A DNA stretch of 64,000 nucleotides, from contig NW_003314263.1 in NCBI RefSeq assembly GCF_000143415.4, forward strand, positions 2,292,734 to 2,356,733, in the 5' to 3' direction. Origin of the DNA: Selaginella moellendorffii. Its lineage: Eukaryota > Plantae > Lycopodiophyta. Positions within the stretch are counted from its first letter, which is position 1. Each line of letters opens with the position of its first letter. The notes below the pieces were generated by a model that saw nothing but the letters and a program-made list of their open reading frames with translations, searched no databases and was not told where the DNA came from. The position numbers and the translations under genes are program-made. Positions 1,398 to 51,940 of the stretch are shown here, in pieces.

Positions 1398-1479
1398 GTC
1401 GCTTTGGCCGAGTGGTTAAGGCGTGTGCCTGCTAAGTACATGGGGTTTCCCCGCGAGAGTTCGAATCTCTCAGGCGACG
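1398..1479 (+). tRNA. tRNA-Ser(GCT)
   Basis: GTCGCTT/AGGCGAC acceptor stem, TGGCCGAGTGG A-box, anticodon loop CTGCTAA, long variable arm, GTTCGAATC B-box, T-rich tract downstream. Confidence 0.95.
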
Positions 1480-2310: not shown

Positions 2311-2508
2311 CTGGAATCAAAGTGGGAAGAATTCCCAGTGATTTTAGATTTCTTTAAAAAGGAGAAATTTTTAAAATACAAATTTATCTTTTGATTTAAC
2401 ATTCTACTATGTGAGAGCTTTAGAGTTGAAGGCTAAACAAAGCAGCAATGCAAGGTTGAAAGCCAGTTCTATATTCATTAACACATACATACTTTTACTA
2501 CTTTAACA

Positions 2509-3399
2509 CTATACATTTGCTTTGGCTGCAAACTTTGTCCAGCCAACATGAATCCCTTCGGCCAAAAGTGCCTCCAACTCCACCGGATGCTGCTGCTGCT
2601 CGCCTCTGTTTTTGCCTACTTGTTGCATCACCTGGAAGCACTTAAGATACATGGCCTTGTCCACAAACTTGGGAGGAGCCCGGGGATTGCAAGCCTCGTC
2701 CCCACCCCGGGGCGCATAGAGATTGTTTGCGCCCCAAGGAACTATGGAGGTAAGCAAGTAGAGCACCAAAAGCCTCCCCACGCGTCCATTCCCATCCCTA
2801 AACGGATGAATGCACTCAAACTTGTAAAAGAAGCTGGCGCCAATGCTCAACAGCTTTGCAACTCTGAGCTTGGGATCTGTCGCAAATGCCTCCTCGAGGG
2901 ATTTGTTGGTAGCTGACAGGAGCTGCTCCAAAGCTGCCGGGATCTTCTTGGGATCCATGTAAACATGCTTGCGTCTCTCTGTTGTCAATGTCCACGCCTC
3001 ACCCCTCCTAAACTCGCCCGCGTCAACCTCGTCCTTGGTGCTCTCCCCGAGCATCTTGTGGATCCGGAGAATCTTCCCGGAATCTAGGCGTGGAACCTTG
3101 TCGGCCTTGGCCTGGGCGTTGACCCAGCACAGGCACCTGTACAGGTTGAGCGTTGACACGAGCTTTGGCTTCCTGTCGCCGCCAAAGCCATCGAGCGCAA
3201 AAGACTTTGACTGGTTGTACTGGTCAATGGCATCGCTGACCTCTTCCAGTGTGTCGAGCCCTTCGCCCTCGATGTTTGCCACTTGGAACACGAATTCTTT
3301 CACCATTGCTGTGCCCTGCTTGAGCGCGCCGCTCTTGTTTTTCTCGGGCAGGGATTCGTACCTCGCAACGCACTTCTCGATGCTCTTGATCGTCGCCAT
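2509..3399 (-). CDS. Fic/Fido-domain protein Fic-A, copy 1 (296 aa, intronless)
   Basis: Full catalytic motif HPFRDGNGRVGR; GEFR..HVY.DP..IP flap region; N-terminal FQVANIEGE resembling the inhibitory helix. Confidence 0.93.
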   Translation of the reverse strand: MATIKSIEKCVARYESLPEKNKSGALKQGTAMVKEFVFQVANIEGEGLDTLEEVSDAIDQYNQSKSFALDGFGGDRKPKLVSTLNLYRCLCWVNAQAKADKVPRLDSGKILRIHKMLGESTKDEVDAGEFRRGEAWTLTTERRKHVYMDPKKIPAALEQLLSATNKSLEEAFATDPKLRVAKLLSIGASFFYKFECIHPFRDGNGRVGRLLVLYLLTSIVPWGANNLYAPRGGDEACNPRAPPKFVDKAMYLKCFQVMQQVGKNRGEQQQHPVELEALLAEGIHVGWTKFAAKANV

Positions 3400-3595
3400 T
3401 ATACCTGAAACCCTAGGCTCGAACCTTTTCTATTCATAGGGGAGCCAACGGTGGGGATTCCAGCTTGAAGGGGGGATGGTTGCGATTAGCCAAGCGCTCC
3501 AACGGTGGGGATTACATCATCATATCGACGGCCAGCGATCAATGCGCGCCAAGTATATATGTTTGGGGAGAAAGTAGGGTTCTTTATCCTCAGGA

Positions 3596-5392
3596 ATGGG
3601 AAAGAAGAAATTAGCGCCAACATCGGCAGATCCGGCTGTGAAGGAGCTATGCAAGAGATTGCTGAAAGCAAGCAAGAAGAAATTGGCAGCTGCTACAGCG
3701 GGCGTGGATATTTCGGCCATGGCAAAGGATCCCAGCGATTTCCTCCTGTTCACCCTGGCGGATCGCCGAGGTCTGTGTCCTCGGTGCATTTTGCGAGGAG
3801 ATTTCCAAGGTTTGGCATCGTCGCTTGCTTTGCGAGACCTTTCTTTTTCCATCAGCGTGCTTTTCTCTTTCGTCCGGAAGCGACATTCTTTTTGTCAGCA
3901 AGGGTTTGCGGGAATTTTTCTTTCCTATGTGTCGGTTTTCTTGGAAGATCACTTTGCTTTCCCTTGTGTGATTGTGTTCTTCGTTTGTTAGCCGTTTGTA
4001 AGCCGCTTTTGACACTTCTTTTCGCCCAGTTTTGCAAGCTTCACGAGAAGGTGGATTGACGATGGCAGTAGCGCGTCCGCTGTCCTTGTAAGCTCGTCCC
4101 GGAAATCTGGAGGCAAATGTAAGTCTCACAATCGAGAGTGTTTGGATGGCATGCTATTTCTTTGCTCGGGCATGCTTTAGTATTTGTCCGTGTTTGTGGA
4201 AGATCACTGTGCTTTTCGTTGTGTGATTTTTGTTTTTTGTTTGTGTTCTTGGCTTCGTTTGCTAGTCGTGAGGCTTTTAACACTTCTTTTTGCCATCCTG
4301 TCCCAGTTTCTTCAACAACCACAAAGTCCACAAGCTTTGCAACCTTGTACAAGTCGGCAGGATCAAACGCACCACCACTGCTACCGACGAGTCTCGCTGT
4401 AAGTAGCGCCTGGTAACATTCTTATGCCTAATGCTTGAAACCAGAAACGAATGGACATCAACTCGGAGACATGTCCAGTGAAGACGAGGATCGTCCCGGA
4501 CATATGGAGGCGAAGGTATGGTTTCAATCGAGAGTGTGAGTTGCTTGGGTGGCATGCTAGTTTTGATCGAGAGTGTGAGTGAGCGTCTTCGGTGGCATTC
4601 TCGTCGTGCACTTTAGCCCAGCTATATCTCTTAAACTTGGTCCTGCGAGCCTCTTCTCACTAGTGCTGTTTGTTTGTTTCTCTACAGGTCTGAGAGAACG
4701 GGATTCTCTGAGTAAACTGCACCGGTGTTTTCTACGATATTCATTCAGGTTTTCTTGCTTTTTCTTGCTTTTGTGTTGGAGGAACGACTAAAAACCAGCG
4801 TTGAGTTGCTGCAGGGCTAATCAGTTTTGGACTATCATTCTTACCGGCAGAGGCGGAGCGGGAGCGGGAGCGAGAGAGGCTAGTAGCAGCAATGGATGTC
4901 GTTGAGGGATGGGAGGTGGACAAGATCATCACCACTGACGACCTCATTGGCGCTACTTTGACTGGTCGAGCGGATGGGCTGCGGCGCAGAGAGGCCAAGA
5001 CGATGACAACAGGCGGGAGGTGGCATCACTACGAGCCTTGGAAGAAGCTGCCTGGAGCGATCGAGCGGTTGCTGCAACAGCTTGGAGAGGCTAGAGAAAG
5101 ATATCGATGCGATCCCGATCCTCTGGGAGAAGCAGCCGTGGCTACGTACCTGTGGAGTGTGGCAGAGTTCTTCTTCAAGTTCGAGAAGGTGCACCCATTT
5201 TCTGATGGCAACGGGAGGATTGGACGTGTCCTACTTGCTTGGCTGCTGCGGGATTTCACTGCTGGTAAGCATTTTGTCTTTCGATCGGCGGGAGGTGGTA
5301 TTCTAACTAGGACTTCATATATAGCTCTGTTCGAGAGTGATGTAGCCAACAAGATGTTCACGGCTATTGTGAACAGCTTGCTGGTGAGTTAG
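3596..5392 (+). CDS. Fic-domain protein Fic-B, copy 1; multi-exon, Fic core in exon 4851-5392; putative exon 2 frameshifted
   Basis: HPFSDGNGRIGR motif; upstream exons inferred from splice signals; exon 2 (4030-4118) is 89 nt versus 90 nt in copy 2. Confidence 0.7.
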
Positions 5393-5504
5393 ATCATATG
5401 TTGGAGAGTTTTACGTAAATAAGATATTTCGTCTCTTTCCTTGAATGTCGCTCGCAGCAGCGGTCTCCACTGTCGTCAAGCAGTACTACTTAGCGAAGGG
5501 CGGA

Positions 5505-6270
5505 GGCGACGCCTGTGAAATCGCCAGTGCGAGTTCTTGTTTCCTGATGGACGAAGGCCAGATCGATCGAGGTACCCAAAGTTTCTAGTTCTGTGGACGC
5601 TTTGTCCTTGATACATGGTACTATGTTTGTGCTTTTGCGAAGAACTTCCAAAGGTTTTCCACGAGTGAAAGTGGACTTGAGTCGCCAAAAGAACCAGTTT
5701 CGAAGGTTTTGTTCTTGACTGGAAGTTTTGATCTGACCAACGATTCTTGACAGTTCCAGACCAAAGTAGGAAGATGCAACTGGCATGAGACTTTTTTGAT
5801 GCTGGCTCTTGTTCGTGACCAGGTGTTTGCGTGCGTGAGTTTGTTTGTGTTTTGAAACTTTTGGATTTGCCTTTCTTCCTACCGGTGATACTTTGTTTGG
5901 AAAGATGGCGACTCAAATTTTTAGAGCTTTCAATTGTTGGCTGGAGCCTGAGAGCTTTGGATTAGTCAAACTGAATGTCCGTGGGCCAAGAAAAATTGTT
6001 CTGTTGTTCCAAGCACTCGAGTCAGCGAAACTAATTCAGTGACATGACATGAATGGTCAACAATGGTCAACTACACGCTGAGGTTTTCTAAAAGTTCTAC
6101 GCTGACTGTTGAGATCATACAATCGTACTTCTCGGCCAGGACAGCGAAACTGAGGTGCCTTGATGCACGAGACCAGACAGTGGTGATATTCCCCATGATT
6201 TCCAAGCATCTGTGCACTGAAATCAAGGGAGACATTGGCTTTCTCACACTTGCTCGCCACCAAGTATGAG
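5505..6270 (+). pseudogene. Deleted remnant of the 2-hydroxyacid dehydrogenase gene followed by a TRM61 last-exon remnant
   Basis: Colinear patches matching 24415-25215, then TEIKGDIGFLTLARHQV matching TRM61 AETKGHTGFLTFARCQV. Confidence 0.8.
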
Positions 6271-6619
6271 ATTCACATTTGTTCCAACAAGATCAACACG
6301 ACCAGTGTTAAATGTACCCCAAGGGTTTTGATCCTTCAAAGAGCTAATCGATGTTTGTATTCCCATACACGTCCGTTATGTGGTCTGGCCAAGTAATTCC
6401 CAGCGTTGTTTCATGTATACATTCTCCCCCGCTTACTACCATTTTGGACTTTCTTTTACGACACTTTCCAAACGCTTTTTATTTTCAAGACGAGACAGAG
6501 TTGAGACAGTCAAAAAAGGATTCGCCAAAACACAAGCAGAAAAGAAGGAGAAGTAGCAGAAGAACAAAGAGATGAACAAGTATGAAGTAGAAGAAGAAAC
6601 AAAACAACTCCAAGAAAAC

Positions 6620-6905
6620 CAGGATGAGCAATGAGTTCCATACCTCTCTTGTTGATGGCCTTGGCAATGCAAGCCTCCTCCTGTTTCCCAAACTTCACCT
6701 CCCACTCCGTCTCCATCACCCTCCTCGCTGCTTCCTTGTCCCGTGCGTAGTCCGTCAACCTTTCAAGGATAATTCACCCTTGCAAATTCCTTTTGTCCAG
6801 CCGCTGCTCCAGCTCGCACTTCTTGCAAGTGCACTCGAAGTCCAACCTCGTGGGTAGGCTGTTGGCGGCCTACTTGCTTGCCTCCATCGTTCCCTGGGGC
6901 GCAAT
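6620..6905 (-). pseudogene. SET-domain (ATXR1-like) gene remnant
   Basis: Post-SET-like LDFECTCKKCELEQRL and MEWEVKFGKQEE-type segments; internal deletion relative to 15480-16040. Confidence 0.55.
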
Positions 6906-6909
6906 CTCT

Positions 6910-6960
6910 GCGCAAGGCTCTTAACCTTGTGGTCGTGGGTTCGAGCCCCACGGCCTGGCG
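6910..6960 (+). pseudogene. 3' two-thirds of tRNA-Lys(CTT)
   Basis: GCGCAAGGCTCTTAACCTTGTGGTCGTGGGTTCGAGCCCCACGG matches plant tRNA-Lys(CTT) anticodon and T arms; 5' acceptor strand and D arm missing. Confidence 0.85.
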
Positions 6961-7142
6961 GTAGGGCGGTGCTAGTGGGCTCCACGTCACCCGGTAGCAA
7001 CTATCCTATCCTATCAACTTTGGTAGGATACCAAGTTCGGAGTTTAAATTTAGGGCTCCCACTATAATCGGAGCCCTAAAAGGTTAAAACCCTAGTACCT
7101 AGGTCTTTGACCAAAGAATATGTTGCGCCGATTCTTTACCCT

Positions 7143-7189
7143 ATCCCATATGCCGGGGCGTGGAGTGAGGGCACAAGAGCAGTATATAA
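7143..7189 (+). promoter_or_regulatory. Plant snRNA promoter: USE at -70 and TATA at -30
   Basis: ATCCCATATGC (consensus RTCCCACATCG) at 7143 and TATATAA at 7183, Pol II snRNA spacing. Confidence 0.8.
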
Positions 7190-7212
7190 GCTAGGGCCTG
7201 GGGAAGTGATCC

Positions 7213-7374
7213 ATACTTACCTGGACGGGGTCTATTGGTGATCATGAAGGCCAATGGCCTAGGTTCGGCCTTCCCATTGCACTTCGGCTTGGCCGGCCTA
7301 CCATCTTCCCAAAGTGGAGGAGTGGACGTCGTAATTTGTGGAAGTTGAGGGCTCGCGTACGCGCGGCCCTCTCC
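7213..7374 (+). ncRNA. U1: U1 spliceosomal snRNA, copy 1
   Basis: 5' ATACTTACCTGG, loop I GATCATGAAG, loop II ATTGCAC, Sm site AATTTGTGG, terminal GC hairpin. Confidence 0.95.
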
Positions 7375-7589
7375 AAATTCTCAAGCTCTAAGATGGACAA
7401 TTCTTTGGTCGCGGCCCTTTTCAATTTCTATTTGTAAAGAGGGCTTTCTCTTTTGATAACTTCTTCTTGACAAGGTAAAGTACTTTCGTGATACGGCTGG
7501 GAGTAAAAATTTCGAAAATACGCCTTATCTTGCGAGCTAAGGGATGAAAGCCACAGAGCAAGATCAGTGCACTGCTGGATTTGCTCGTC

Positions 7590-8730
7590 ACTGCTCTTCA
7601 GGTCCTTTCTCATGGCCCGTCGTCGGCTCTCTCTTCTCTCTCGCTCGGCGCTTACCGTCACCGCTCCCTGGCCGAGATGGCTCGAAAGAATAGCTCTCCG
7701 GCTCGGAGTCCGGCCTCACCTTGTCCCGGAGATGGCGAGGCAAGTCCTCAAGGAGCACGACGCCGAGTTTGCGAGAAGGCCCCACTACTCCTTCGTGCCT
7801 CGCCTCCTCAGCCACAACTTCCAGGACCTCATCTTTGCGCCGCGAGCGATAGCGAGTGAGCGCCGCGGAGCTCTTCACGGCCTCCAAAGTCAGCCACTTG
7901 GAGCTGGGAGCGTTTGGATCGATCGTCGAGTTGATCTCAGCTCCATGCTGCACGAGTACTTCACGAACCGTGTTGTTCGGGAGGAAGTCCTACGGTACCG
8001 ACGAGCCGCTCACTCCCGAGGCCGAGGACTACAAGGAGTCGGATCGTAGCGAAAGAATCCAGATGGCTGTTTGCAGATGATTACATCCCTGCGCTGCGGT
8101 GGCTGGACACGCTCAGGACGCAAAATCGTCTCAAGAATGAGGTCTTACCGGCAAGAGCTCGCTTTCTCAAAGCAGTCATCGAGGAGCACGCGGAAGGCTT
8201 CGATCCAGGAAATCCCCGGGACTCTGTCGACGTGATGCGGACTCTGGGAGGAGAAAACAAGCTCAGCGATTCTGTTCTTTCTCACGTAAGCTTGCGGACA
8301 CGGGTGGGCACGCCGACTGGTCGTCCGTAACTTCCAGGGCGACGATCGAATGGGCCGTCTCGGAGCTGATACTAAACCCCAGAATCCAGGAGAGAGAGCT
8401 CACGAGGAGCTGGACAGAGTCGTGGGAAGAGATCGCTCCCTGGAGGAGCGGGATCTAAAAGACCTGCCTTGCATCACACCACAGTCCTCGTTAACGTCTG
8501 GGCAATCCATCACGACCCAAGCGCCTGGAGCGACCCCGAGCGATTACTGGGCAGCGACAACAGCGTGCTGGGGAATGACTTCGATCTCCTGCCCTTCTCG
8601 TCGGGGCGGCGCCGCTGCGTCGAATCCCCGTGTCACGCTCACCTTCGCCTACCTCTTGCATCGATGGAGCTGGCGATCGCCGCCTGGGAATGGCGCGCAT
8701 TGTCTATCGCTAAAACCCTCTCATTTTGAT
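7590..8730 (+). pseudogene. Cytochrome P450 (CYP71-clan-like) pseudogene, copy 1
   Basis: [51 protein letters not shown], heme motif [10 protein letters not shown]; many frameshifts and deletions. Confidence 0.88.
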
Positions 8731-8916
8731 TTCAAATATTTATAATTATTAAGATATAAAAGTAAATTGCCTATAAAACGGTAATAAATTTAATAAACAT
8801 TTAACCAATTATAATTAAAAGCAAACCCTTAAATTGTAAAAAAGTAAAATTTCCTTTTCTTACTAATATAAATAAATGGCCAAAACCACAAGTGTTTCCA
8901 TAGGTTTGAGTGAGAG

Positions 8917-9279
8917 ATGGCGATGGAGAAAGTCGAGAAGCCTGTGACAACGCTAGAAAAGGTGGAGAAGTTCATGGCCAAAGTATTGACATGGGTGGAT
9001 GCGAAAATCTTTTTAAAAGCCCCTCCCAAGCCGATGCCCAGCATCTGCGATCTTCTCCCCGAGATCAAGCCATGGTGTGCAGTTTGCAAGGACAAGTTCG
9101 AGCTCGATAGCGTGGTGAAACAGATACCATGCGAGCACTGTTATCATCTGGAATGTCTTCGCGAGTGGATGGAAAACAATGACTCGTGCCCGATGTGTAG
9201 CGCAAAGCTCCCCAAGCCCATTACCTTCCGTGCCATATGGAAAGCAGTGGAAGAGGAAACGCGCTGGTTAGGACAGTAG
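8917..9279 (+). CDS. RING-H2 zinc-finger protein (120 aa), copy 1
   Basis: CAVC..PCEHCYHLEC..W....SCPMC C3H2C3 pattern; intact intronless ORF. Confidence 0.88.
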   Translation: MAMEKVEKPVTTLEKVEKFMAKVLTWVDAKIFLKAPPKPMPSICDLLPEIKPWCAVCKDKFELDSVVKQIPCEHCYHLECLREWMENNDSCPMCSAKLPKPITFRAIWKAVEEETRWLGQ

Positions 9280-9333
9280 ATTTACGTGTAACAATCAAAG
9301 AGAAGAAATAGAATCGATCTTTTCTTTCCATGG

Positions 9334-10632
9334 CTATTCGTCTGGAAACATGGCTTTGAAAAAATCTGTGTGGCAGTCATGGCAGAGATAGAACCAGGAG
9401 AAGTGGCCCTCGCCTTGTAACCTGTGGAAGTTTACGTGAGGCAGGACTCGCTGCGCAAACTCGCTCATCGCAATCGGCACGACTACATCGTCAGTTCCCT
9501 GATTACAATCGCCAAGATCAGCAAGCTTTTGGAAAAAACCAAACGAAGAAACACCACCACCTACATGCCATATATGTATTGGTCGCTGGAAGCCGAGGAG
9601 ATCCGACTGTTCTTGAGAGAAAAGGCCGTGAAGCTTGCTCACGATTCCATCGCCGGCGGGAGGTCTCTTTCGCTTGAGATCGCCCAAGTCGAATCCCCAG
9701 TTGTTAACCAGCAAGACTAGCTCTTGAGCCAGCGAGAATGCTCGCTTCTGGTTCATGGATTCCCGGACGTCGTCTTCCCATAATCTCATGAAATCCTGCT
9801 GCTCGAAAAGAGCTCGATCCTGCAAAACTCGATGACCTTGAGTCATTCCACGATCAAAACAATGCAAACCTTTGGTCTTGAGGTGGCATACAAGCTTCTG
9901 CTAAGCCTGTCGATCTTCTCCAGGAGAGTTCTCCGGAGAAAACCTCCAAGTGAAGATGGAAACTTCCTGGCACAGAAATGGAGCAATCTTCTCCGGAATG
10001 ACCAGGCCTTCCAGGCTTTGGCCGCTTCGCTCGAGGTGAGATTTCCTCCGCATGGATTTCCTGCCGGAGCAACCATAGCAACACCTGTGTCCAAGAACAC
10101 AAGCAAGCAACACTCTTGCTAAACTCTCAAGAGAAAAAAGAAAGATGTGATCACCTGCTAATCTCTCTGGAATGTAGTGAATCGCAGCCCAAACGTGAGG
10201 ACCACCTCCATCAAAGCCCAGGATCCAAAACTGGTCGCCAAAACCGAGAGCGTCGGCGATGCTGATCATGTCCGAGGCCGAGGTTTTGTAACTTCTGTTG
10301 TGGTGAGGATCACTCTCTCCAAATCCTGGCAAGTCGTAAGCTACAAGATGAACACCATAGCTATCGGGCAGTGAAGAATTGATTCCGGGAATTCCTACAA
10401 GTTGACGGAGCGACTGTAGAGCCCATGAATGAAAAGCTCACGAACCTGCTAGTCTCGATGAGAGAAATCCATGAACAACGAGCACTGTGCGCTTTGCTTG
10501 ATCGGCAGGGACACCTTCTTCTCGGTATGAGATGTTTCTACCGTCCGGTAATTGGATCCGCCTGGGTGGAATTCGAGCTTTCTGACGATCGTCTGGAGAT
10601 GCCTTGGGCTGAAACGATCGTGTTCTAGGCCC
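9334..10632 (-). pseudogene. Alpha/beta-hydrolase gene, 5'-truncated and frameshifted, copy 1
   Basis: RIQLPDGR..VHGFLSSRLAGIPG..YDLPGFGESDP..GTDDVVVP..GEGHFSWFY with intact introns; frameshift near 10560; no in-frame ATG. Confidence 0.75.
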
Positions 10633-10825
10633 TGCATTGGATCGATTTAAGCCTTTAATCGATTTAAACTTTGTGGATTGACTGGCTTTCAACCTTGCTT
10701 TGTTTCAGCCTTCAACTCTGAAGCTCTCTTTATTAAAAACTACATAATAGAATGCTAAACCAAAGATAAATTTATATTTGTCCTTTTTAAAGTAAAATCT
10801 AAAATCACTGGGAATTCTGATTCCA

Positions 10826-11160
10826 TCAACGTCCACACCTGTTCAAGGAATCGTTAGTCCAAAATATTCCAGTCAAGAACACAACACCAAATTGGAAGAT
10901 CAGTTGCATTCTTCTAGTTTCATCATTCTTGCCACGCACATATCGTATTCCTGGGAAACCTTGGAATTTCTTCGCAAAGAACAGTGTTGACCTGGGCAAA
11001 CAAGAACAAAGTAACGACATGCATTTGGGCAGACAAGAACATAGTAACAACACTTGCAAGAACAAAAACTTCTTCGTCCACCGGAATCCATCAGGAAGGC
11101 TCGCACGGGCGATTTCGCATGCCCCTCGCGTGGCACCTCAATCAGCTGCTGCAATCTACA
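10826..11160 (-). pseudogene. Inverted, condensed fragment of the dehydrogenase 5' exons
   Basis: Reverse complement of 24363-24806 with deletions (SKVSQEYDMCVARMMK, RMQLIFQFGV). Confidence 0.82.
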
Positions 11161-36466: not shown

Positions 36467-38089
36467 ATGGCGCTCGAGGTGCTGTCCGCCTTGGACAAGG
36501 CCAAGACGCAGTGGTACCACTTCACCGCCATTCTCATCGCGGGTATGGGCTTCTTCACGGATGCTTACGATCTCTTTTGCATCTCCACCGTGACCAAGCT
36601 CCTGGGAAGGATCTACTACTACGATTCAACCACTGGAAAGCCCGGAGCACTCCCAGCAAACGTAGCGGCGGCCGTCAACGGTGTGGCCTTTTGCGGGACT
36701 CTGTCCGGCCAGCTCTTCTTCGGCTGGCTCGGTGACAAGCTGGGACGAAAGAAAGTCTATGGGATGACGCTCATGCTCATGGTCATCTGCTCGATCGCCT
36801 CGGGGCTCTCCTTCGGCCACACTGCCAAGTCGGTGATGACAACGCTGTGCTTCTTCCGGTTCTGGCTTGGATTCGGCATCGGTGGCGACTATCCTCTCTC
36901 GGCCACGATCATGTCCGAGTATGCCAACACCAAGACGCGCGGGGCATTCATCGCGGCGGTGTTTGCCATGCAAGGATTTGGAATCCTGGCCGGCGGGATA
37001 GTGTCGCTGGTGATCTCCGCGGCGTTCAACCATGCTTATCCGGCGCCATCTTTCAACGAGAATCAGATAGCATCCACTCCAACCGAGGCGGACTTTGCGT
37101 GGAGGCTCATCTTCATGCTCGGAGCCATCCCGGCGGCGCTTACGTTCTACTGGCGGATGAAGATGCCCGAGACCGCTCGCTACACGGCTCTCGTGGCAGG
37201 GAATCTCAAGCAGGCCACGCAAGATATGAGCAAAGTTCTCGAGATGGAGGTGGCCACGGAACCTGTCAAGCATGAGTCCCCGATGCAGAAGCTAAAGTTT
37301 GGTCTCTTTACGAAAGCGTTTGCGAGGCGACACGGCCTCCAGCTCCTGGGCACCACGACTACATGGTTCTTCCTAGACGTCGCCTTCTACAGCCAGAACC
37401 TCTTCCAAAAGGACGTTTTCACCGCGGTGGGATGGCTCCCGGGGCCTGGAAGTATGAGCGCGATGGAGGAAGTCTACAGGATCTCGCGAGCACAGACACT
37501 GATCGCGCTGTGCTCCACGGTTCCCGGGTACTGGTTCACGGTGGCTCTCATCGACAAGATTGGACGCTTCACCATCCAAGTCATGGGCTTCTTCATGATG
37601 ACCGTGTTCATGTTCGCGCTCGCCATCCCCTACTACAAGCTCCGCGGGGACAAGTGCGGTGACAGCTTCTGCGGCGGCCACCACATGACGTTCATCGTGC
37701 TCTACTCGCTCACCTTCTTCTTCGCAAACTTTGGGCCCAACTCCACCACTTTCATCGTCCCCGCGGAGCTCTTCCCGGCCCGGCTGCGATCGACTTGTCA
37801 CGGGATCTCGGCAGCGGCTGGAAAGGCCGGGGCCATCGTTGGAGCTTTCGGGTTCCTCTACTTGTCGCAGAACCAACACGAAGGGCAGCAGGAGCATGGC
37901 TACCCGACTGGACTGGGGATCCGGACGGCGCTCCTGATGCTGGGAGGATGCAACGCTCTGGGGCTCCTGTTTACGTTCTTTGTTCCAGAGACAAATGGAC
38001 GGTCGCTCGAGGACTTGTCTGGCGAGAACGAGGAGGAGATGTCTGCCACTCCAGCGGCGCTGCCACCACCTCCACGCGAGGATGTATGA
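36467..38089 (+). CDS. PHT1: Inorganic phosphate transporter, PHT1 family (intronless CDS)
   Basis: [19 protein letters not shown], signature [31 protein letters not shown]. Confidence 0.97.
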
Positions 38090-40482
38090 GAGAAGAGAGA
38101 AAGAAAAGAAAGAAATTTCTCCTCTCGCTGTAGTACTTGAAAGTTTCCGGAGAACTTTAGCTGTTTGTACGAAGATTAATTTCTTCATGTTGGCATTCAT
38201 TGCAACGATTGTCGCATGATGTTGGTGGTGTGGTGTAGTTTATCACTGCACTGCCCGTGCTAGTTCTTGGTGATTTTTGGTGTGGAGGATTTGCTAGCAG
38301 GATTATAAAATGGGTGGGAAGAGGAAAGTCCCTGGTGGTCCTTGAAAATCTGGAGGAGTGAGTGTTGAGCTTGCCTCATAGCCGCATCCAGTCTCCAAGG
38401 TGAGCAGCCTCTAGTTGATGGAACAATGAAAGTAAAGGAAGTTGGCAAAATGAATCTGTAACTTCAGGAAAAGGATTAGCTCGGGCTTAAGCCATGCTAT
38501 ATAAAGTTAAAATATATATATATATATTAAATTATAATTATATACTTTTATTCAATCATAGTTTTTAGAATTAACTTTAATTTTGAATAGATGCTGAACT
38601 CAGATGTACAAAAAATATGATTTAAATAAATTAAAGTACTTTAAAAATATTTAATAAGTAATGAATTATTTTTAATTTCAATTAAATGATAGAAGACTTT
38701 TTAAAAATGAGAAAAGATTACAATATATCTTAATATAATAGATGCAATTTGCTATATGCTTTCAAATTATGTGCAAAGATCATCTTTATTTCTTGTGTAA
38801 AAATATTTTTTTCACATCACTTCTATCACTAGTGAGTTAGAGTTAATGAAAAATAAAAAGTTATAATAATAATTAAAGTACTAATATAAAAATAATATGT
38901 TATATAAATAATATTCAAATGATTTATTACCCTATATTTCAATTTTTTCTAAAAACATATTTAACATTACAAAAACAGTATATATGTTTTATGAAATTTT
39001 ATTACTTAGAACTTTTATAATGCAATTAAATAATATAACTTTAAATCTATAATTTATATATATTTAAATAAATTAAAATAATTATTAGAAAAAATTAATA
39101 AAAACTTAAAAATAAATTATTTGCCCAAGGTTATTCAAATAACTTCGGCCCCTCAAGCTGTCAAAGTACCCAAGGTGATTAGCAAAAATGCTAAAAGTAC
39201 CATAAAAATATTTGTGGTTGTTAATGAAAATGCATACTGACCACCAAAAAAGAAGGAATAAATAAAAAAGTATAAAAAAATAACATGAAAACAATCAAAT
39301 AAAATAAATTCACTGTTGGTGGCATTATTATTCAGTTTTTCATTCATATGTTATATCGTTCTTGATTTCGCACTTTCACGAGTTATATTTTATTTGTTAA
39401 AATACAAATTATTTTTTTTAATCCTATTTCCAAATATATGTTAATAAAATCTATGTCTATTTAGTTATTATTTTGTGCATAATTAAAACTATTGAATTCT
39501 CTTTTATTGTTAACATTTAATTTTTTCACAAATACTATAAACTATCAATACTGAACTTAACATTGTTACTCATATTTTCTTTTGTACAATATAATAAAAT
39601 AATATTTAATGGTGATATAACTCATGATACTTTCAATGAAAATTTACAATCAATTTTATTCTAAATTATAAGAACACAGTTCTTTTAGCAAAAATAAAAA
39701 TTGTTTAAAATAATATTATGAATATTTCGACATTGAAATAAAGTTTTCAGCTTTACTCTATTCGAAATATATAAGTATTGAAGAATCTTGAAAATTTTGT
39801 TATAAAGTAAAAAATTTAAATATATATATATATAGTAAATGTTATTTAATAAATTTATATAAAAATTTACTTATTATTTTATAATGATTTTAGCTATATA
39901 TGAAAATAAATAATTTGATGCCCATTGCATGCATTAATATTTGGTTTGCTTAATAGTAGTGTTATTTCTATTTATTATTCTAATTGATAAAATGGAAGTT
40001 TATAATTATAAACATATCTATAATTTATAAACAGAAGATTAATCTTATTGAATATCAACTATTAGATGTTAGAATACACTAGAATATACTATTGAATATT
40101 AACTATTAGATGGTAGAATAAACTAGAATATACAAAAAAGTGTTTTGGAAAGTTTATAAATGATAAATATGTTTATAAATTATAATTACAAAATTAATCT
40201 AAATAAATAATAACCGTTAGATGGTAGAATATCCTAGAATATCTTTGTATATTCTAAACATATTTACTATCAGGTTTGCTTAAGGAAATTTAAAAGAATG
40301 CACGTAATTAAAAATGATTTAGGTTAAATATAATGTTAAATTAAAATTAAAACCACTATTAAAATTATATTAAAATGATTTACTCTCCATTCTATTTGTA
40401 CAGTTATCTGTGAGAGAAAAACAATTCTACGTAAGAGATTTAAAGGTAAAAAGAAATTAGGATGACCGGCAGTTTAGGGTTC

Positions 40483-44374: not shown

Positions 44375-47300
44375 TCAGGGTTCTCTTGTAGATGGCCTGG
44401 GATCTGGAGGAACGTCAGGAGGAGGCATCGGCGGATCTGTAGACGGTATTAACTGCTCCTGATCCCTTTGTATGAAGCGTTTTAACCGCTGCACATGCAT
44501 AATCTCCGGAGGATCGGTTTGCTGAACGTCATGCCGAACCTCATAAACTTGCGGTCCAACTTGCCGCAACACCCGATACGGTCCTTTCCACTGCGCAAGG
44601 AGCCCCTTAGATAAACCACGTACCGTAAGATGGGGAAAACGAACTAACACCAAATCATTCACTTTGTACTCCGCAGGTGGATGATGATGGGAGTTGTAGC
44701 GCCGTTGTTGTCCCACTTGTACGCGGCCTAAGTGTTCGGCAGACTCTGCTCGGACAAGTGGAAGAATGCTTGTCAAATACTGATCCCATGACCTAGCATC
44801 AGGAGCTCGTGGCAATCGCGAAGGTAAACCCAACTCTGTTGGTAATATTGGATCATGACCATATAGAAGTTTATATGGTGAAGCACCAATAGAACTTTGC
44901 ACCCCTGTGACATAGGCATATCGAAGAGACGGCAAATAACCATCCCAATCCGAATGCTGGAAGTTCACATACTTCGAAATCATCCCTTTGAATGTCCGAA
45001 CGAGCCGTTCCACCAGACCGTCTGATTGTGGATGATAAGCACTCGTAAAAGTGTGGCGTATCCCCAACCGAGATGTCAAAACATGAAATACCTCAGCCAT
45101 AAATGTAGGACCATTATCCGAAAGAATCCGCTCTGGACAAGAATGCTGGAACACCACTCGATTGAGGAGGAAGTATCCAACAGCAGTTGCAGAGGCGCTA
45201 GCAAGAGCACCAACTTCCACCCAACGAGTCAAGTAGTCATAAGCAATAATAACATACTCATTGCCAGCAGTCGATCGTGGAAAAGGTCCTATAAGATCAA
45301 ACGCCACCAACTCAAACGGACGGGAAATTGCAATTGACTCCAACCGTCCTTCCGCAGCACAAGGGGGAGTATTACGAGCTTGGCACCAAACGCAACTACG
45401 CACATACCGAATAATATCACGTCGCATCTCCGGCCAATAGAAAGACCTACGCAGCTTCTCGGTGACACGACGGTGTCCCATATGCCCACCTAGAACAGGA
45501 GAATCATGGTAGGCATGGAGAAACCGCGGAATAAACACCGAAGGTACCACCAGTCGTAAATGATCATCAGGATCCGTCCCCACAAAATAAAGAAGGCCAT
45601 CTTCAAGGCGATATTGAGAATGTAAATGCCGGAAAGGCAAGTCATCAGCAAGTGATGCAGGATTCTCAAACCCATCTCGAAGCCTTCGAATCCACGGCTC
45701 AATCCTTTGAGCCTCGCGAACCTCCTCAAGAGAAGGCAGATCTTGCTCTGCACCCTGTGGACACTGAACGTCAAGGACAGCAACCGCCGACGGCACAGAA
45801 TCCTCATCTAGAAAATCCACAGATGCTGGAACAACAGGTTCGTCAGAATGATGAGAAGTGAGTGGAGAAGGAAGAGGAGCTCGAGAAAGGGCATCAGTAT
45901 CAGCCATAGAACTCCCTGGGCGATGAACAACATCAAAATCATATATCTGAAGCTTCAAAGCCCATCGAGCCGTACGACCAACCAGGTTCTTCCGCTTCAA
46001 TAATGAAGTAACAGCAGCATGGTCACCTTCAAGTAACGTTCGAGAACCATGTAGATATGCATGAAGTTTCTCGAAACCCCAGACTACTGCTAAACACTCC
46101 TTCTCCGTCGTGGAGTAGTTCATCTCCGCTGGTTGTAATGTACGGCTTATGTATGCAATGGGATGGCGCTGACTAGGCACACTCGAGCTCTCTTGCATCA
46201 ACAAAGACCAATGTCAGAAGCATCCACGCGCAAAATAAAAGGTCGAGTGTAGTCAGGATATGCCAAAACCGGAGGAGTCGTCAATAGCTCCTTGAGATCC
46301 ACGAACGCCCACTCATAATCCGGAGACCAGATGAAAGATGACGTTGATGACTTCAGCAACGCTCGCAATGGTGTAGTGCGATCGGAAAGATGATCCACAA
46401 AACGACCAAGATACTACACCTTACCCAAAAAGCGCTAGACATCATTCACACACTTCGGAGTAGGGAACTTTAGAACAGCCACAAGTTTGTCAGGATCAAC
46501 TTGCAAACCCTCACGAGAAATACGGTACCCAAGATAAGTTGTGTCCTTGGACCCAAACATGCACTTCGACCGCTTCAGCTTTAAACCAACGTCGCGTAGC
46601 CAATCCAACACTTTACAAATATCACGAACGTGCTCCTCCCACGTCCCCTCCGAGTGGATCAAGACATCATCAATGAAGTCAGCAGTCACCTCCGGCATAT
46701 CGCAAAGAACCTCGTCCATCATCCGTTGGAAAGTTGCTAGAGCATTGTTCAAACCAAACGGCATCACCAAGAACTCGTACAAACCAAATGGTGTACGAAA
46801 AGCAGTCTTAGGAATATCTTCTTCGGCCATCGGTACTTGCCAATACCCAGAAGCAAGATCTAGCTTGGTGAACCAACGACTCCGCCCCAGACGATCCAAG
46901 AGATCAGCAGTGTGAGGAAGAGAATACACATCTGGGATCGTCACTTCGTTTAACGGATGATAGTCGATGCAGAAACGAATACTCCCATCAGGCTTCGTCA
47001 CAAGATGAGGTTCACATGCCCAAGGACTCCGTGACTTCCGAATAACACCCTTTTCCAGCATGTCCTTGACGTTTGCTCGTAAAATTTTGATCTCCTTAGG
47101 TGACCAACGACGAACAGGAACCTTGATTGGACGAGCATCCCCGGTTGGAATTGGATGACGTGTGGCAATCTTGGCCCCAGATGATAGGTCAAATTCAAAG
47201 AGATCAGAATACTCCTTCATGAGCCGGTCAACTGCTATAACAGAAAGATCGTCGGAGGGATCGGAAAAGGGAAAAGCAGAACAAGATGGAAACACAGAAG

Positions 47301-47856
47301 GAAAGAGTGGGGAAACAAAAGTAATGGAAGCAAAGGTAAAAGTAGAGGGACGAAGAGGTATGGAAGTGAGAGGAATGGATGAAACATAAGGAAGTATGAG
47401 ACAAGGGGGAGAAGCCTCAAAGTCACACTTGGCATGATTGCGCTGCAACCAATCCATACCAAGAATGAGGTCAAAAGCTTGACTCGGCACCACCCGCAAC
47501 GATTGCAACTCAAGCTCGAGATCGCCCACACGCACAACCAGGTCCACCTCATCCCGTGCACATGCATGTGTACGGCCATTGCCATAAAGAATGAAAACTG
47601 GTTCTGCCGCACGACGCAAGTGTAGACGACAACGTGTGGCAACAGGTCGAGCAATAGAAGATAAACTCGAACCTGTATCAACCAACACGGAGAGAATAAT
47701 AGGAGACTTCTTGTTATAAAAACGAGCTTGGAAAGTAAACACTGGATGAACTGGTGCCGAGTGAACCCCTTGATGATACTCCCAAAAGAAAGATAGAGGG
47801 GTCACTGATTTATTCGCGCAAGGTCCCTCCGTTACTCGCGCGACTCCTCGTTTCCC
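44375..47856 (-). pseudogene. pol: pol (protease DTG, RT FIDD, RNase H, integrase) with a stop at 46435 and a frameshift near 46202
   Basis: LVDTGSS, LDLASGYWQ, FIDDVL, HHCC and DDE motifs; lesions seen by comparison with the copy at 61.2-64 kb. Confidence 0.93.
47795..47856 (-). promoter_or_regulatory. -1 ribosomal frameshift signal (G GGA AAC plus predicted pseudoknot)
   Basis: Slippery heptamer in the gag frame, pol in the -1 frame, 6 nt spacer, 9 bp stem 1 and 6 bp stem 2. Confidence 0.8.
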
Positions 47857-49146
47857 GGATGCATCTCGGTGTCCAGACCTTCCACTGCAGCAGCACCCAG
47901 GGGACGTTGCTGACACCAAGGTCTCCACCCAGGAAATGGAGGTCTCCAATCCGGAAAATGACGGCAACGCCGATAAGTATGACCAACTTCATCACACGCC
48001 CAGCAGCGAACATCACGGCTATGACCACGTCCTCGCGCGTGTCCTTGGACTCGAGTAGCAGCAGCATCAACCTCCATTGGAACAGGACCATCACCCATAG
48101 GAAGTGGAGCGGAAGGACGTGCAGCGAGAAGTGGAAGAGGCGACGTCTCATAACGTTGTGCCAAGCGAAGAGCATCGTCAAGGGTGGCAGGAGCAAGTGC
48201 ATGCACAAGTCCAACAAGATCTTGACGAAGTGCTGGCCACAACATTCCTAGCTTGATCCGCTCCGACATATTTGGCTCCGCACGAAGCAAAAGACTTCGG
48301 AAACGAACGCCAAATTGCATCACCAACTCTGATGGCCCTTGGCGAAGACGATGCAATTGTTGGAAAGCATCATCACAATCATCGGCATGTCCGAAGGCGC
48401 GTTTGAAGACGTCCGGGAGAACACTCCAATCCCCACGAGTAGCTGCGCTCAAACCATTGTACCACTGCAACGCCGTCCCTTGGAGACACGTGGGAAACTC
48501 ACGCAATTGTCGAGCATCATCCCAAGAATGATATGTGGCAATCACCGTAAAGTGATCGAACCAATGGTACACATCATCCCCAGGATTCCCGCGAAAGAAC
48601 TCCGGTCGAACGCGAGGATTGGCACCAAGAGCAGGAGGAGTTGTACCACGTGCCGTGAACGCCGCCATCAACTTGTAAGCAACCAAAGGGAACAACTCGA
48701 GAGACGATCCGTTAGGGTTCAAATATAGAGGGAAAGGGCCCATGAATAAGAGTGCACCGCCTTTTCCAATCGGTTAAGGGTCTTGGGATATTTGGAGTTA
48801 AGCGTCCTTGGGTTTGAATAGTACTGGGCTGGGTGACCTCCCGGGAAGTCTAAACTCAGGAGCTTACATTTGGTATCAGAGAGGTCTCGGGTCCGACTCT
48901 GTTGGTTGGCTAAGGGAATCACACCACATGTTGATTGACATCTAGCTGGTCCAGTTTGTTCCCGCTGGGCTCGACCCAAGGGGTAGGGTGTCAAGAGAGC
49001 GGGGCTCTCGGGAGAGCTGCGGCTAAGAAGTCTAAACTCAGGAGCTTACACAACTGAGTTTGGTTGTTCAATTGCAAGCGCATAGCATCAAGCAATTGAA
49101 CTAACTGCTGCTCTAGAGTCAAAGGAGGAGATTGCGGATCGGCCAT
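47832..49146 (-). pseudogene. gag: gag with CCHC zinc knuckle, interrupted by a TRIM insertion
   Basis: MADPQSPP..NNQTQL|MAAFTARG rejoin in frame once 48674-49055 is removed; LQGTALQWY, PVPMEVD, CWACDEVGHTYRRC. Confidence 0.9.
48674..49050 (+). mobile_element. Cassandra-type TRIM with a 5S rRNA-like segment in its LTR
   Basis: TSD CAACT; TGTAAGC..GCTTACA termini; LTR 48674-48868; PBS TGGTATCAGAG at 48871; 5S-like core 48796-48850; only ~24 bp of the 3' LTR remain. Confidence 0.88.
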
Positions 49147-49641: not shown

Positions 49642-50533
49642 TTGTTAATTTTTCTTTCCTTTTTCTTTTCCATGTGTTTTTATATATAAAAGCAAATAAC
49701 TAAATTGACAATCAATTTTGTAAAATTTTATCTAATTTATATAATTTTTTTACACTTAAGTTTTTGTATTTTATTAGTTCATAACTATAGTGGCAATTTT
49801 AATGGCCATAACCACAGCCCATCCCAAATGGTTATGGCCACCTTCTTCCACATGCGAATTATTATTGTTACATTGTTAATAAACAATACATTAAATATTG
49901 CTATGGCAATGCTTAATTTTTGCTTCTTGCTAGCATGCATAATAGATATCATTTAATTTCCAAAAACAAAAAAATGTGATACTTTGCTTTGAAAGTTGGT
50001 AAAAGTTTAATTTTGGAACTGGAGCTGAGTTAGTGCAGCTTCAAGTACTCAATATTTAGTATGAAAACCATGTCAAAAATGAAAACATGAAATCAATCCA
50101 GCCTATAAGGTTAAATGCAAAAAAATATAAACACAACTGTTGCACTAGCAGGTTGGCCTAGGCAGCCATTCGCTATTACATGGCTGTTACTATGGCTGCC
50201 AAAGCCAGGAGTTGGGTTGCTAGTCCTCTACTGCGATGAGGTGCTAATTGACATAGGTTTGAAATTAAATATCTCAGTATGCAATGGCATTTGATATAGC
50301 TAAAGTTAAAGTTAAACATAAGATATCTAGATCTAAGCTTTTTATGATATATACTTAATCATAGTAATTACAAGATTTTGATCCCAAGGAAATCAATGCA
50401 ACGTTGCACTCAAAATCCTATGAAAATCACTAAAGAAAACGCTTAATTTCTCTCTCTAGGAAAATTATAATGAATGTGCCCTAAACCACATGGACCAGAA
50501 ATAAAAACTAGTTAGGTCTAGTTATATAAGATA

Positions 50534-50929
50534 TTAAAGTCCATCTCTTGCTAATAGTTTTATAGATACATAAATAGAACCATCTAAGAAAAGAACCTTA
50601 CCACCTATACCATAAGCTAGTATACAGTTGTTAATAATGAATCTGAAAGATTGAACTATATCCTGTTGAGTAAAATGTATATTATTAGCTCTCCATCCGT
50701 GTACTATCATGATAATTTCATTGTTATTCTTTTGTGTTTCATAAACGTGATCATAAGGTGAATTTTTCCATTGTAAGAGGACATAATCTATAGAACGATA
50801 TAAAAAACTCATTGAGACTCGTCTTCGTGGGTCATAATTGAAACATCTTTTATTAGCTCGACTTGAATAACTGAGACATTGTAGAATACTCAAATTAAAT
50901 AAGATTATAATACTGATTAAGAATTTCAT
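50534..50929 (-). CDS. Hypothetical small secreted protein (131 aa), AT-rich, intronless
   Basis: ATG start, clear signal peptide MKFLISIIILFNLSILQCLS, long ORF despite high AT content. Confidence 0.55.
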   Translation of the reverse strand: MKFLISIIILFNLSILQCLSYSSRANKRCFNYDPRRRVSMSFLYRSIDYVLLQWKNSPYDHVYETQKNNNEIIMIVHGWRANNIHFTQQDIVQSFRFIINNCILAYGIGGKVLFLDGSIYVSIKLLARDGL

Positions 50930-51584
50930 TTGAAATATGCTGTTGAAATTTTCCTTTGATTATTATAGTAAATCAGATTTAACTTACTATAAAAATACAG
51001 TCATAGAATGTTAATTTTAAAAACTACACTTATATTTTAATAGAACCTTATTTGATTTTAGTCATTAAATTACATTATTTTTCTTTTGAATAAAAATATT
51101 AATATAAGGTGAGTGTCTATTACAATCGCTTGCTAATTTTGATATAATAAATTTTGGTAGTTATTATTGATAAGCTACACCAAATACATGCCCTGGGTCC
51201 TTGATAAAAGACACTTAAAGCTAAATGAAGAAAATGTTAGTGACACCATTTAATCCTATAATCTCTTATAAGTTCCAAAATTCATCTCTCTCTCTCTCTC
51301 TCTCTCTGACCTTTCTTGTTTAATCTAACTTTTCTTTCTTTTTTCTCTATGTTTAGATTTTACCTTTCCCTTTATTGTTTCTTTTTATTTCTTTTATTTT
51401 TCTAGTTAAAAGCGATGTATTACACAATGTTAAATCTTGTGGTCAAGTAGCATGCAATCCTGTATCAACATATGTAGTTACTAGGTGATCAACTAGATGC
51501 AATGTGTGATCATGTATTGGACACAAGAAGTAGGTAAATACTGCTTGTTTAAAACTCGCCATATAAGTTCCTTTGAATAAAAAG

Positions 51585-51940
51585 AAAATTTAAGAATATG
51601 CTGTATTGGTAGCGAACAACGTGTCGATGTGCACAGCTCCAAGGACATCTCAGCGAGANNNNNNNNNNNNNNNNNNNNNNNNNNNNNNNNNNNNNNNNNN
51701 NNNNNNNNNNNNNNNNNNNNNNNNNNNNNNNNNNNNNNNNNNNNNNNNNNNNNNNNNNGGATGATTACCGAAGAAAACGAATACGGCTCTTGTCGCCGGA
51801 GCACAAGGACTTACACGGAGGTCATGCGTGATGAGAAGCTCAAGCGCAACAGACTCGAAGATCGAACTGGAAGGATTTGGCCGAGAAAAGGAAACTGGAG
51901 AAGGGAAAACAACCAGCTGGTTCTAAACGAAAGAGAGAGC
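51585..51940 (+). pseudogene. Deleted duplicate of the SF3B1 promoter and 5' CDS (spans an N gap)
   Basis: GAAAATTTAAGAATATGCTGTATT matches 54341; [16 protein letters not shown] and [21 protein letters not shown] patches. Confidence 0.85.

What the first reader, a model, noticed from the sequence alone, without database searches (positions are those of the whole stretch)
2509..5392. Head-to-head pair of Fic-domain genes amplified in tandem in a land-plant genome
Seen: two different Fic genes are divergently oriented across only ~196 bp (Fic-A ATG 3399, putative Fic-B ATG 3596). Both have the full HPFxDGNGRxxR motif, and the pair is repeated (Fic-A x3, Fic-B x2). Established: this motif marks AMP-transferase-type Fic enzymes of bacterial toxin-antitoxin modules and effectors and metazoan FICD/HYPE. 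To my knowledge Fic proteins are not part of the angiosperm core repertoire. Inference: a possibly horizontally acquired two-component AMPylation system (AMPylase/de-AMPylase or toxin/antidote, perhaps defensive or selfish). The intronless Fic cores fit a microbial or viral origin.
Basis: partly seen in the sequence, partly recalled or inferred. Interest (0 to 1): 0.88.

Follow-up and report, generated by a model that had tools for sequence, protein, structure and literature searches.

The report
Spikemoss Fic gene plus truncated copy
The spikemoss Selaginella moellendorffii really has an expressed, well-conserved Fic (AMP-transferase-type) gene next to a shortened, fast-changing copy of it, copied in tandem with ordinary plant genes, but nothing shows that the two work as a pair or came recently from a microbe.

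Summary
The window is Selaginella moellendorffii scaffold GL377567.1. It carries three intact copies of Fic-A (296 aa) and two of Fic-B, all with a complete HPFxDGNGRxxR motif, inside an 8.8-kb tandem duplication. That unit also holds a U1 snRNA gene, a RING-H2 gene, an alpha/beta-hydrolase gene and P450-like fragments.

- **Fic-A** is unspliced, transcribed and under purifying selection (dN/dS about 0.15). It folds as a FICD-like Fic enzyme with an N-terminal inhibitory-helix glutamate.
- **Fic-B** is only the core of a Fic domain; both ends are missing.
  - Its RNA is spliced (five GT-AG introns) and polyadenylated.
  - ATG 3596 opens a different, out-of-frame ORF. The Fic ORF starts at 4892, behind seven upstream AUGs.
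  - It evolves near-neutrally between copies (dN/dS 0.79) and was deleted from copy 3.
- **Family.** Both genes fall in one plant clade, with about ten Selaginella paralogue lineages and the fern Adiantum. Some are already in RefSeq as "fic-1". Solved FICD is the nearest structure by sequence profile.

Recent microbial transfer and contamination are rejected. A functional A:B module is untested. This scan already reported Fic pairs elsewhere in this genome (s1-432092), with a similar verdict.

The parts
2509..3399 (-). Fic-A copy 1. A 296-aa single-exon ORF with inhibitory-helix-like VANIEG (Glu44), a beta-hairpin flap at residues 136-146, and the motif H198-PFRDGNGRVGR209.
   Evidence: AF2 pLDDT 92. 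RNA contigs are colinear over 2489-3324.
3400..3595 (.). Spacer of 196 bp between the Fic-A ATG and the first ATG of the Fic-B transcript. Presumed bidirectional promoter.
   Evidence: No RNA-run coverage over 3424-3561. Conserved at 98% between copies. Promoter function is inferred.
3596..5445 (+). Fic-B transcription unit, copy 1. Exons are 3596(or a little upstream)-3809, 4030-4118, 4307-4398, 4445-4515, 4688-4748 and 4815-5445. Five GT-AG introns of 220, 188, 46, 172 and 66 nt. Poly(A) is added at about 5445.
   Evidence: Spliced contigs of runs X4 and X11 show the joints, which are absent from DNA run X1, and an A10 loose end sits at 5445. Splice sites were read from the sequence.
4892..5392 (+). 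Fic-B core ORF, copy 1. 166 aa with motif HPFSDGNGRIGR. It matches only positions 131-277 of the 320-position family profile.
   Evidence: AF2 pLDDT 88.8.
11341..12231 (-). Fic-A copy 2, 99% amino-acid identity to copy 1.
12428..14320 (+). Fic-B transcription unit, copy 2. It has an intact 175-codon upstream ORF. The RNA contigs carry this copy's indels.
13761..14267 (+). Fic-B core ORF, copy 2. 168 aa, 94% identical to copy 1.
20277..21167 (-). Fic-A copy 3, intact, 98% identity. Its Fic-B partner is deleted: the repeat breaks at 21358-21368 and resumes at the equivalent of about 5970.
   Evidence: DNA-run joint 3612->5812.
2452..22136 (.). Tandem array of an 8.83-kb unit: two full units plus a partial third. 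Each unit also carries a U1 snRNA gene, P450-like fragments, a RING-H2 ORF and alpha/beta-hydrolase exons.

Best explanation
This is a lineage-specific plant Fic locus made by ordinary local gene duplication. Fic-A is a working member of a FICD-like, single-domain Fic family found in lycophytes and ferns. It has a full catalytic loop, a target-docking flap and an N-terminal helix whose glutamate (Glu44, VANIEG) aligns with the autoinhibitory and de-AMPylation glutamate of FICD. It is therefore most likely an autoinhibited cytosolic AMP-transferase/de-AMPylase acting on unknown plant proteins (inferred). Fic-B arose by an old inverted partial duplication of a Fic-A-like gene. It kept only the catalytic core and acquired a repeat-built, five-intron leader. 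It is now transcribed divergently from Fic-A, but its ORF lies behind seven upstream AUGs and a 175-codon out-of-frame ORF. It is drifting and dispensable, most likely poorly translated or not translated. A recent segmental tandem duplication of 8.8 kb then copied the pair together with its plant neighbours.
For: Species and host context: an exact SF3B1 match to GCA_000143415.2 scaffold GL377567.1, with plant genes and a U1 snRNA inside the unit. Expression: Fic-A contigs are unspliced. Fic-B contigs carry five GT-AG joints absent from the DNA run, plus a poly(A) end, and flanks have zero coverage. Frames. Selection between copies: Fic-A dN/dS 0.13-0.16 (7 nonsynonymous to 15 synonymous changes, p=5e-6 against neutrality). 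Fic-B dN/dS 0.79 (10 to 4), which fits neutrality (p=0.75) and not omega 0.15 (p=0.003). Truncation: no N-terminal remnant by tblastn or HMM in any frame. Fic-B is deleted in copy 3. Family: the exhaustive HMMER search gives best hits in Selaginella paralogues and Adiantum. The plant clade has 95/93 support and Fic-A+Fic-B are sisters at 80/78. The plant-only profile hits FIC-1/FICD best, at E 4e-16, from the inhibitory helix to the motif. Folds. Other loci of the family are single, tandem or head-to-head, so orientation is not conserved.
Against: Fic-B keeps an open 166-168-codon frame and a perfect 12-residue catalytic motif in both copies, despite only 37% identity to Fic-A. It gets a confident fold, and its ATG has a good context (GCAGCAATGG). 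That argues it was selected as a protein for most of its history and may still be. The 10:4 substitution count is small. Other notes of this scan report further head-to-head Fic pairs in this genome (untested here), and an unrelated eukaryote (L007) also has one. Enzyme activity, targets and localisation were not tested. The 5' end of the Fic-A mRNA is not resolved, because RNA contigs stop at 3324; a DNA contig also breaks there, so this is probably an assembly artefact.
Confidence: 0.6

Rival explanations
1. Two-component AMPylation module. Fic-B, lacking any inhibitory helix, is a constitutively active (toxin-like) AMPylase kept low by its uORF-laden leader. The co-transcribed Fic-A counteracts it, by inhibition in trans or by de-AMPylating its targets as FICD does.
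For: There is divergent transcription from a spacer of 290 bp or less. Fic-B has an intact motif and flap but no inhibitory helix. Its core resembles class I toxins VbhT and EcFicT in size (TM 0.5-0.6 by target). A and B were duplicated together. Head-to-head Fic pairs are reported at other loci of this genome (unverified) and occur in L007.
Against: Copy 3 keeps Fic-A and has lost Fic-B. Fic-B drifts near-neutrally. Other family loci are single or same-strand tandems, and in L007 both partners are full length.
Confidence: 0.13
2. Fic-B is a dead relic. The real product of the transcript is the upstream 175-codon ORF or no protein at all (a long non-coding RNA), and the Fic ORF merely sits in its 3' untranslated region.
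For: The upstream ORF comes first, and its stop lies 39 nt before the last exon junction, so it should escape nonsense-mediated decay. Only the copy-2 type with the intact upstream ORF is seen in RNA contigs. Fic-B dN/dS is 0.79.
Against: The upstream ORF is broken by a 1-nt deletion in copy 1, has no Pfam match and is built of internal repeats, so it looks even less constrained. The Fic-B frame and motif are intact in both copies.
Confidence: 0.2
3. Recent horizontal acquisition from a bacterium or virus, or assembly contamination.
For: The Fic-A ORF and the Fic-B core ORF each lie within a single exon. Fic genes have a patchy distribution in plants. Many bacterial Fic hits reach 30-39% identity.
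Against: The locus has GT-AG introns and poly(A), host-like GC and plant genes inside the repeat unit. It is found in DNA and RNA runs of 7 studies. There are many diverged paralogues in the same genome plus fern homologues forming one clade. No bacterial subfamily model reaches its cutoff. No flanking inverted repeats were found.
Confidence: 0.03

Closest known systems
FICD/HYPE and C. elegans FIC-1 (metazoan ER AMPylase/de-AMPylase of BiP)
   Same: It is the best solved relative of the plant-clade profile (E 4e-16), aligned from the inhibitory helix through the Fic motif. It shares the same fold (Foldseek TM 0.6-0.7), the inhibitory-helix glutamate and the complete HPFxDGNGRxxR motif. RefSeq already names a Selaginella paralogue 'fic-1'.
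   Different: Fic-A has no transmembrane anchor and no TPR domain; it is 296 aa with the Fic domain only. It shares only about 18% identity in structure alignments. It is multi-copy and clustered rather than a single conserved gene. Its target is unknown.
Bacterial class II Fic proteins (SoFic 3EQX, BtFic 3CUC, Dde_2494 4RGL)
   Same: These are top structural matches (3CUC E 4e-9; Atlas TM 0.76-0.77) and share the N-terminal intramolecular inhibitory helix architecture.
   Different: Fic-A lacks their C-terminal winged-helix domain. The NCBIfam SoFic score is 39 bits against a cutoff of 550. In the tree the plant sequences form their own clade.
Class I Fic toxin-antitoxin pairs (VbhT/VbhA, EcFicT/FicA)
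   Same: Fic-B is a minimal core without its own inhibitory helix, of similar size and fold to these toxins.
   Different: No small adjacent ORF carries the [S/T]xxxE[G/N] helix. The neighbour is a full-length Fic enzyme on the other strand. The gene structure is eukaryotic and spliced. No toxicity has been shown.
Other Selaginella moellendorffii and Adiantum nelumboides Fic genes (XP_024542721, SELMODRAFT_425001, 447619, 444864, 407185; MCO5567833, MCO5614706)
   Same: They fall in the same monophyletic clade, at 30-40% identity over the full length. They share the QVNKIEGEG inhibitory helix and the C-terminal IEGVYVGWK helix. They tend to sit in local clusters.
   Different: Fic-A and Fic-B of this locus are absent from every protein collection searched. 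Fic-A lacks the N-terminal PxWR segment, and Fic-B lacks both ends.

Membership tests
Fic/Fido superfamily (Pfam PF02661) | Match to the Fic HMM above the gathering score | tested here: met
   Fic-A scores 64.8 bits and Fic-B 44.3 bits, against a cutoff of 24.
Fic/Fido superfamily (Pfam PF02661) | Catalytic motif HxFx(D/E)GN(G/K)RxxR | tested here: met
   HPFRDGNGRVGR in all three Fic-A copies and HPFSDGNGRIGR in both Fic-B copies.
Fic/Fido superfamily (Pfam PF02661) | Helical Fic fold with a beta-hairpin flap before the active-site loop | tested here: met
   AF2 models have pLDDT 92 and 88.8, with strands at 136-146 (Fic-A) and 36-46 (Fic-B). All top Foldseek hits are Fic proteins.
Fic/Fido superfamily (Pfam PF02661) | Nucleotide-monophosphate transfer to a target protein | not testable with these tools
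   Needs a biochemical assay.
Class II (intramolecular N-terminal inhibitory helix) Fic | [S/T]xxxE[G/N] helix N-terminal of the core | tested here: inconclusive
   Fic-A helix 30-44 ends in V-A-N-I-E44-G. The Glu and Gly are present, but the first position is Val rather than Ser/Thr. It aligns with the FICD TVAIEGN region in profile alignments. Fic-B has no N-terminal region at all.
FICD/HYPE orthologue | Type II membrane anchor plus TPR repeats plus Fic domain | tested here: not met
   Only the Fic domain is found in the 296-aa protein. Only about 10 codons are open upstream of the ATG, and no RNA lies upstream.
Class I Fic toxin-antitoxin module | Adjacent small ORF that supplies the inhibitory helix in trans | tested here: not met
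   The upstream ORF of the Fic-B mRNA has no xxxE[G/N] helix motif and no Pfam match, and it is broken in copy 1.
SoFic equivalog (NCBIfam NF046030) | Score at or above the curated cutoff | tested here: not met
   39 and 26 bits against a cutoff of 550.
Plant (lycophyte+fern) Fic clade | Groups with the Selaginella and Adiantum Fic proteins to the exclusion of other sequences | tested here: met
   The 10-row clade has 95/93 support in an IQ-TREE careful search and contains Fic-A and Fic-B.

The most novel reading that the evidence does not exclude
Fic-B is a eukaryotic 'unleashed' Fic core: a constitutively active AMPylase without an inhibitory helix. Its dosage would be throttled by a uORF-rich leader, and its effects reversed by the divergently co-expressed, FICD-like Fic-A. 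That would make a toxin/antidote-style or stress- or defence-triggered AMPylation switch in a vascular plant, a lineage textbooks say lacks Fic enzymes.
Probability: 0.1. Interest if true: 0.8.

Novelty: new member of a known kind. Interest (0 to 1): 0.38.

Why it matters
Reviews of AMPylation state that Fic enzymes are absent from plants (PMC12409994). A 2015 survey mentions plant Fic proteins only in passing (PMC4454073, supplement). This locus adds two unannotated, transcribed members to an expanded FICD-like family in a lycophyte that is shared with a fern. Fic-A is clearly under selection. That gives plant biologists a concrete candidate for Fic-type AMPylation/de-AMPylation outside animals. 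It also gives a natural example of a core-only Fic paralogue. The more exciting two-component reading is not supported by present evidence.

Tried and rejected
- **Exact look-ups** of Fic-A, Fic-B and the sugar transporter in public gene calls: not on record.
- **Word-indexed homologue searches** (with a plant alignment): swamped by bacterial Fic motif words and uninformative on plant distribution. The exhaustive HMMER search was used instead.
- **Search for a lost N-terminal half of Fic-B** in the leader, by tblastn and profile HMM on spliced and genomic frames: nothing found.
- **Joining ATG 3596 to the Fic frame** through the observed splicing, in either copy: the frames do not join.
- **Flanking inverted repeats or a cassette**: none. 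GC is not distinct from the surroundings.
- **Paper searches** for Selaginella+Fic, Fic+HGT+land plants, and SRR accessions: nothing relevant.
- **Source organisms:** the Logan transcripts (SRR17638748-53, SRR4210093) and the ENA metagenome contigs (ERZ25072258, ERZ25072293, ERZ26167216) could not be identified.
- **Contamination and recent bacterial transfer:** rejected (see rivals).
Full report
**Observation.** The ORF at 2509-3399(-) encodes 296 aa with a Pfam Fic match (E 1.4e-17). The ORF at 4892-5392(+) encodes 166 aa with a Fic match (E 3.4e-11). A six-frame scan finds five complete HPFxDGNGR sites and no others: Fic-A at three places and Fic-B at two. Self-comparison shows an 8.83-kb unit repeated in tandem at 96-98% identity, as two full units and a partial third. 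The three Fic-A copies are intact and 98-99% identical in protein. Copy 3 has lost Fic-B through a deletion of about 2.2-2.4 kb. The repeat breaks at 21358-21368, and a DNA run carries the matching joint.

**Host and context.** The intronless SF3B1 ORF at 54410-57931 is an exact match to Selaginella moellendorffii GCA_000143415.2, scaffold GL377567.1. The window also holds an MFS sugar transporter and Ty3/gypsy elements. The repeated unit itself contains a U1 snRNA gene, a RING-H2 ORF, alpha/beta-hydrolase exons and P450-like fragments. GC content of the pair is like its surroundings, and no inverted repeats flank it. The stretch is held by DNA and RNA-like runs from seven studies. Contamination is excluded.

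**Transcripts.**
- In runs X4 and X11 (RNA-like), contigs cover Fic-A colinearly from 2489 to 3324.
- The same runs have no coverage over 2320-2457, 3424-3561 or 5770-6440, so they are not DNA.
- For Fic-B they show five joints with GT..AG ends on the + strand that are absent from the DNA run X1, and an A-run loose end at 5445.
- Reading the sequence gives these exons: 3596 (or slightly upstream)-3809, 4030-4118, 4307-4398, 4445-4515, 4688-4748 and 4815-5445. The introns are 220, 188, 46, 172 and 66 nt.
- The RNA contigs carry the indels of copy 2.
- All RNA contigs of Fic-A end at 3324. A DNA contig also breaks at about 3331, so this is probably an assembly-graph break. The Fic-A 5' end is unresolved.

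**Frames.**
- In the spliced RNA of both copies, the ATG at 3596/12428 is out of frame with the Fic core.
- That ATG opens an ORF of 175 codons in copy 2. In copy 1 a 1-nt deletion at 4077 cuts it to 91 codons. The ORF stops in exon 5.
- The Fic frame opens only in exon 5, and its first ATG is at 4892/13761. Seven AUGs precede it in a 638-nt leader.
- The leader ORF has no Pfam match, and the leader is built of internal repeats.
- Neither tblastn with family members nor a profile HMM finds any trace of the missing N-terminal Fic region in any frame of the leader. Fic-B matches only profile positions 131-277 of 320.

**Selection.**
- Between tandem copies, Fic-A has dN/dS 0.13-0.16 (for example 7 nonsynonymous against 15 synonymous changes, p=5e-6 against neutrality).
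- Fic-B has 10 nonsynonymous against 4 synonymous changes (0.79). That is compatible with neutrality (p=0.75) and incompatible with omega 0.15 (p=0.003). Fisher's test against Fic-A gives p=0.04.
- The counts are small, and none of the Fic-B amino-acid changes falls in residues 76-151 around the motif.
- Against decay: Fic-B keeps an open frame and a perfect motif at only 37% identity to Fic-A. It must have been selected as a protein for much of its history.

**Family.**
- Fic-A is in no protein collection searched.
- An exhaustive HMMER search of 1.84 billion representatives gives only nine hits below 1e-10, at 30-40% identity.
- Those hits are S. moellendorffii paralogues and two proteins of the fern Adiantum nelumboides (MCO5567833, MCO5614706), plus unnamed transcript contigs. 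The Selaginella paralogues include XP_024542721, named 'adenosine monophosphate-protein transferase fic-1', and SELMODRAFT_425001, 447619, 444864/410641, 418963, 414686, 419851 and 407185.
- Several annotated models lack the motif. For SELMODRAFT_407185 the motif is present in a 364-codon open frame, so that gene model is faulty.
- A careful IQ-TREE analysis places all plant sequences, including Fic-A and Fic-B, in one clade (95/93). Fic-A and Fic-B are sisters at 80/78, and Fic-B sits on a very long branch.
- The neighbouring clade (100/95, joined to the plant clade only weakly at 74/42) contains Andalucia godoyi and contigs of unidentified eukaryotes.
- Across family loci the arrangement varies: single (L003, L010, L012), same-strand tandem (L002 in Selaginella, L009) and head-to-head (L007).

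**Structure and class.**
- AF2 gives Fic-A pLDDT 92 with 14 helices and a beta-hairpin.
- Foldseek's best matches are BtFic 3CUC and FICD. The Atlas neighbours are bacterial class II Fic proteins.
- The plant-only profile scores C. elegans FIC-1 and human FICD best (E 4e-16 to 1e-12). The alignment runs from the inhibitory helix (QVNKIEGEG against TVAIEGN) to the motif.
- Fic-A has VANIEG with Glu44. It has no TPR or membrane anchor.
- Fic-B folds confidently (pLDDT 88.8) as a core only: one helix, the flap, the active-site helices and two C-terminal helices. It lacks the five N-terminal helices, including the inhibitory one. It resembles class I toxins only in size.
- Bacterial subfamily models are far below their cutoffs.

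**Interpretation.**
- Shown: two real Fic-fold genes, divergently transcribed and amplified with their plant neighbours. Fic-A is constrained. Fic-B is truncated, sits downstream in its mRNA, is drifting, and has been lost once.
- Inferred: Fic-A is an autoinhibited FICD-like AMPylase/de-AMPylase of the cytosol. The pair arose by an old inverted partial duplication. The array arose by a recent segmental duplication.
- The two-component idea remains possible but has no positive evidence.
- Recent microbial origin is rejected. An ancient transfer into early vascular plants cannot be separated from ancient eukaryotic inheritance with loss.

**Literature and earlier notes.** A 2025 review says Fic proteins are absent from plants and fungi (PMC12409994). 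Khater and Mohanty (2015) mention plant Fic sequences in a mixed eukaryote/bacterial clade (PMC4454073 supplement). This scan already holds notes on other Fic pairs in this genome. One follow-up (s1-432092) reached a similar verdict on other DNA.

Noticed in passing
window 7213-7373 and 16205-16365 (+): Full-length U1 spliceosomal snRNA genes (139 and 134 bits) lie inside the 8.8-kb tandem unit, so the duplication also doubled a U1 gene.
   Followed up: no
window 4399-4444: A 46-nt GT-AG intron in the Fic-B leader is supported by two RNA-like runs. That is very short for a land plant.
   Followed up: partly
window 3920-4520: The Fic-B leader is built of internal direct repeats (3920-3973 against 4175-4228; 4094-4121 against 4491-4518). 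Exon-intron modules were duplicated within the leader.
   Followed up: partly
L012:10001-11092 (S. moellendorffii GL377571.1): The annotated model SELMODRAFT_407185 (330 aa, no Pfam hit) skips an intact VHPFLDGNGRVGR motif that lies in a 364-codon open frame. The public gene model is probably wrong.
   Followed up: partly
L007:6734-8894 (ENA ERZ25072258, unidentified eukaryote, GC 36%): A head-to-head pair of full-length intronless Fic genes (314 and 297 aa, about 30% identical) sits 322 bp apart, next to a ZBED1-like gene. Both carry the N-terminal PxWR motif shared with the plant clade. L009 (ERZ25072293) has a same-strand tandem pair.
   Followed up: partly
window 16546-19268 (and the copy at about 7567-10400): P450-like ORF fragments look degraded. 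A 120-aa RING-H2 ORF (17853-18215) and multi-exon alpha/beta-hydrolase pieces (18270-19268, -) are duplicated together with the Fic pair.
   Followed up: no
window 44375-48743 and 61382-63999: Two Ty3/gypsy retrotransposon copies are about 94% identical. Assembly gaps (runs of N) lie at 51659-51758, 61483-61582 and 62412-62525.
   Followed up: no
window 38001-40000 and 50001-52000: Sharp AT-rich troughs (GC 25% and 31%) stand out in an otherwise 45-55% GC window.
   Followed up: no
window 1398-1479 (+): A tRNA gene (Rfam, 57.8 bits) lies just upstream of the array.
   Followed up: no
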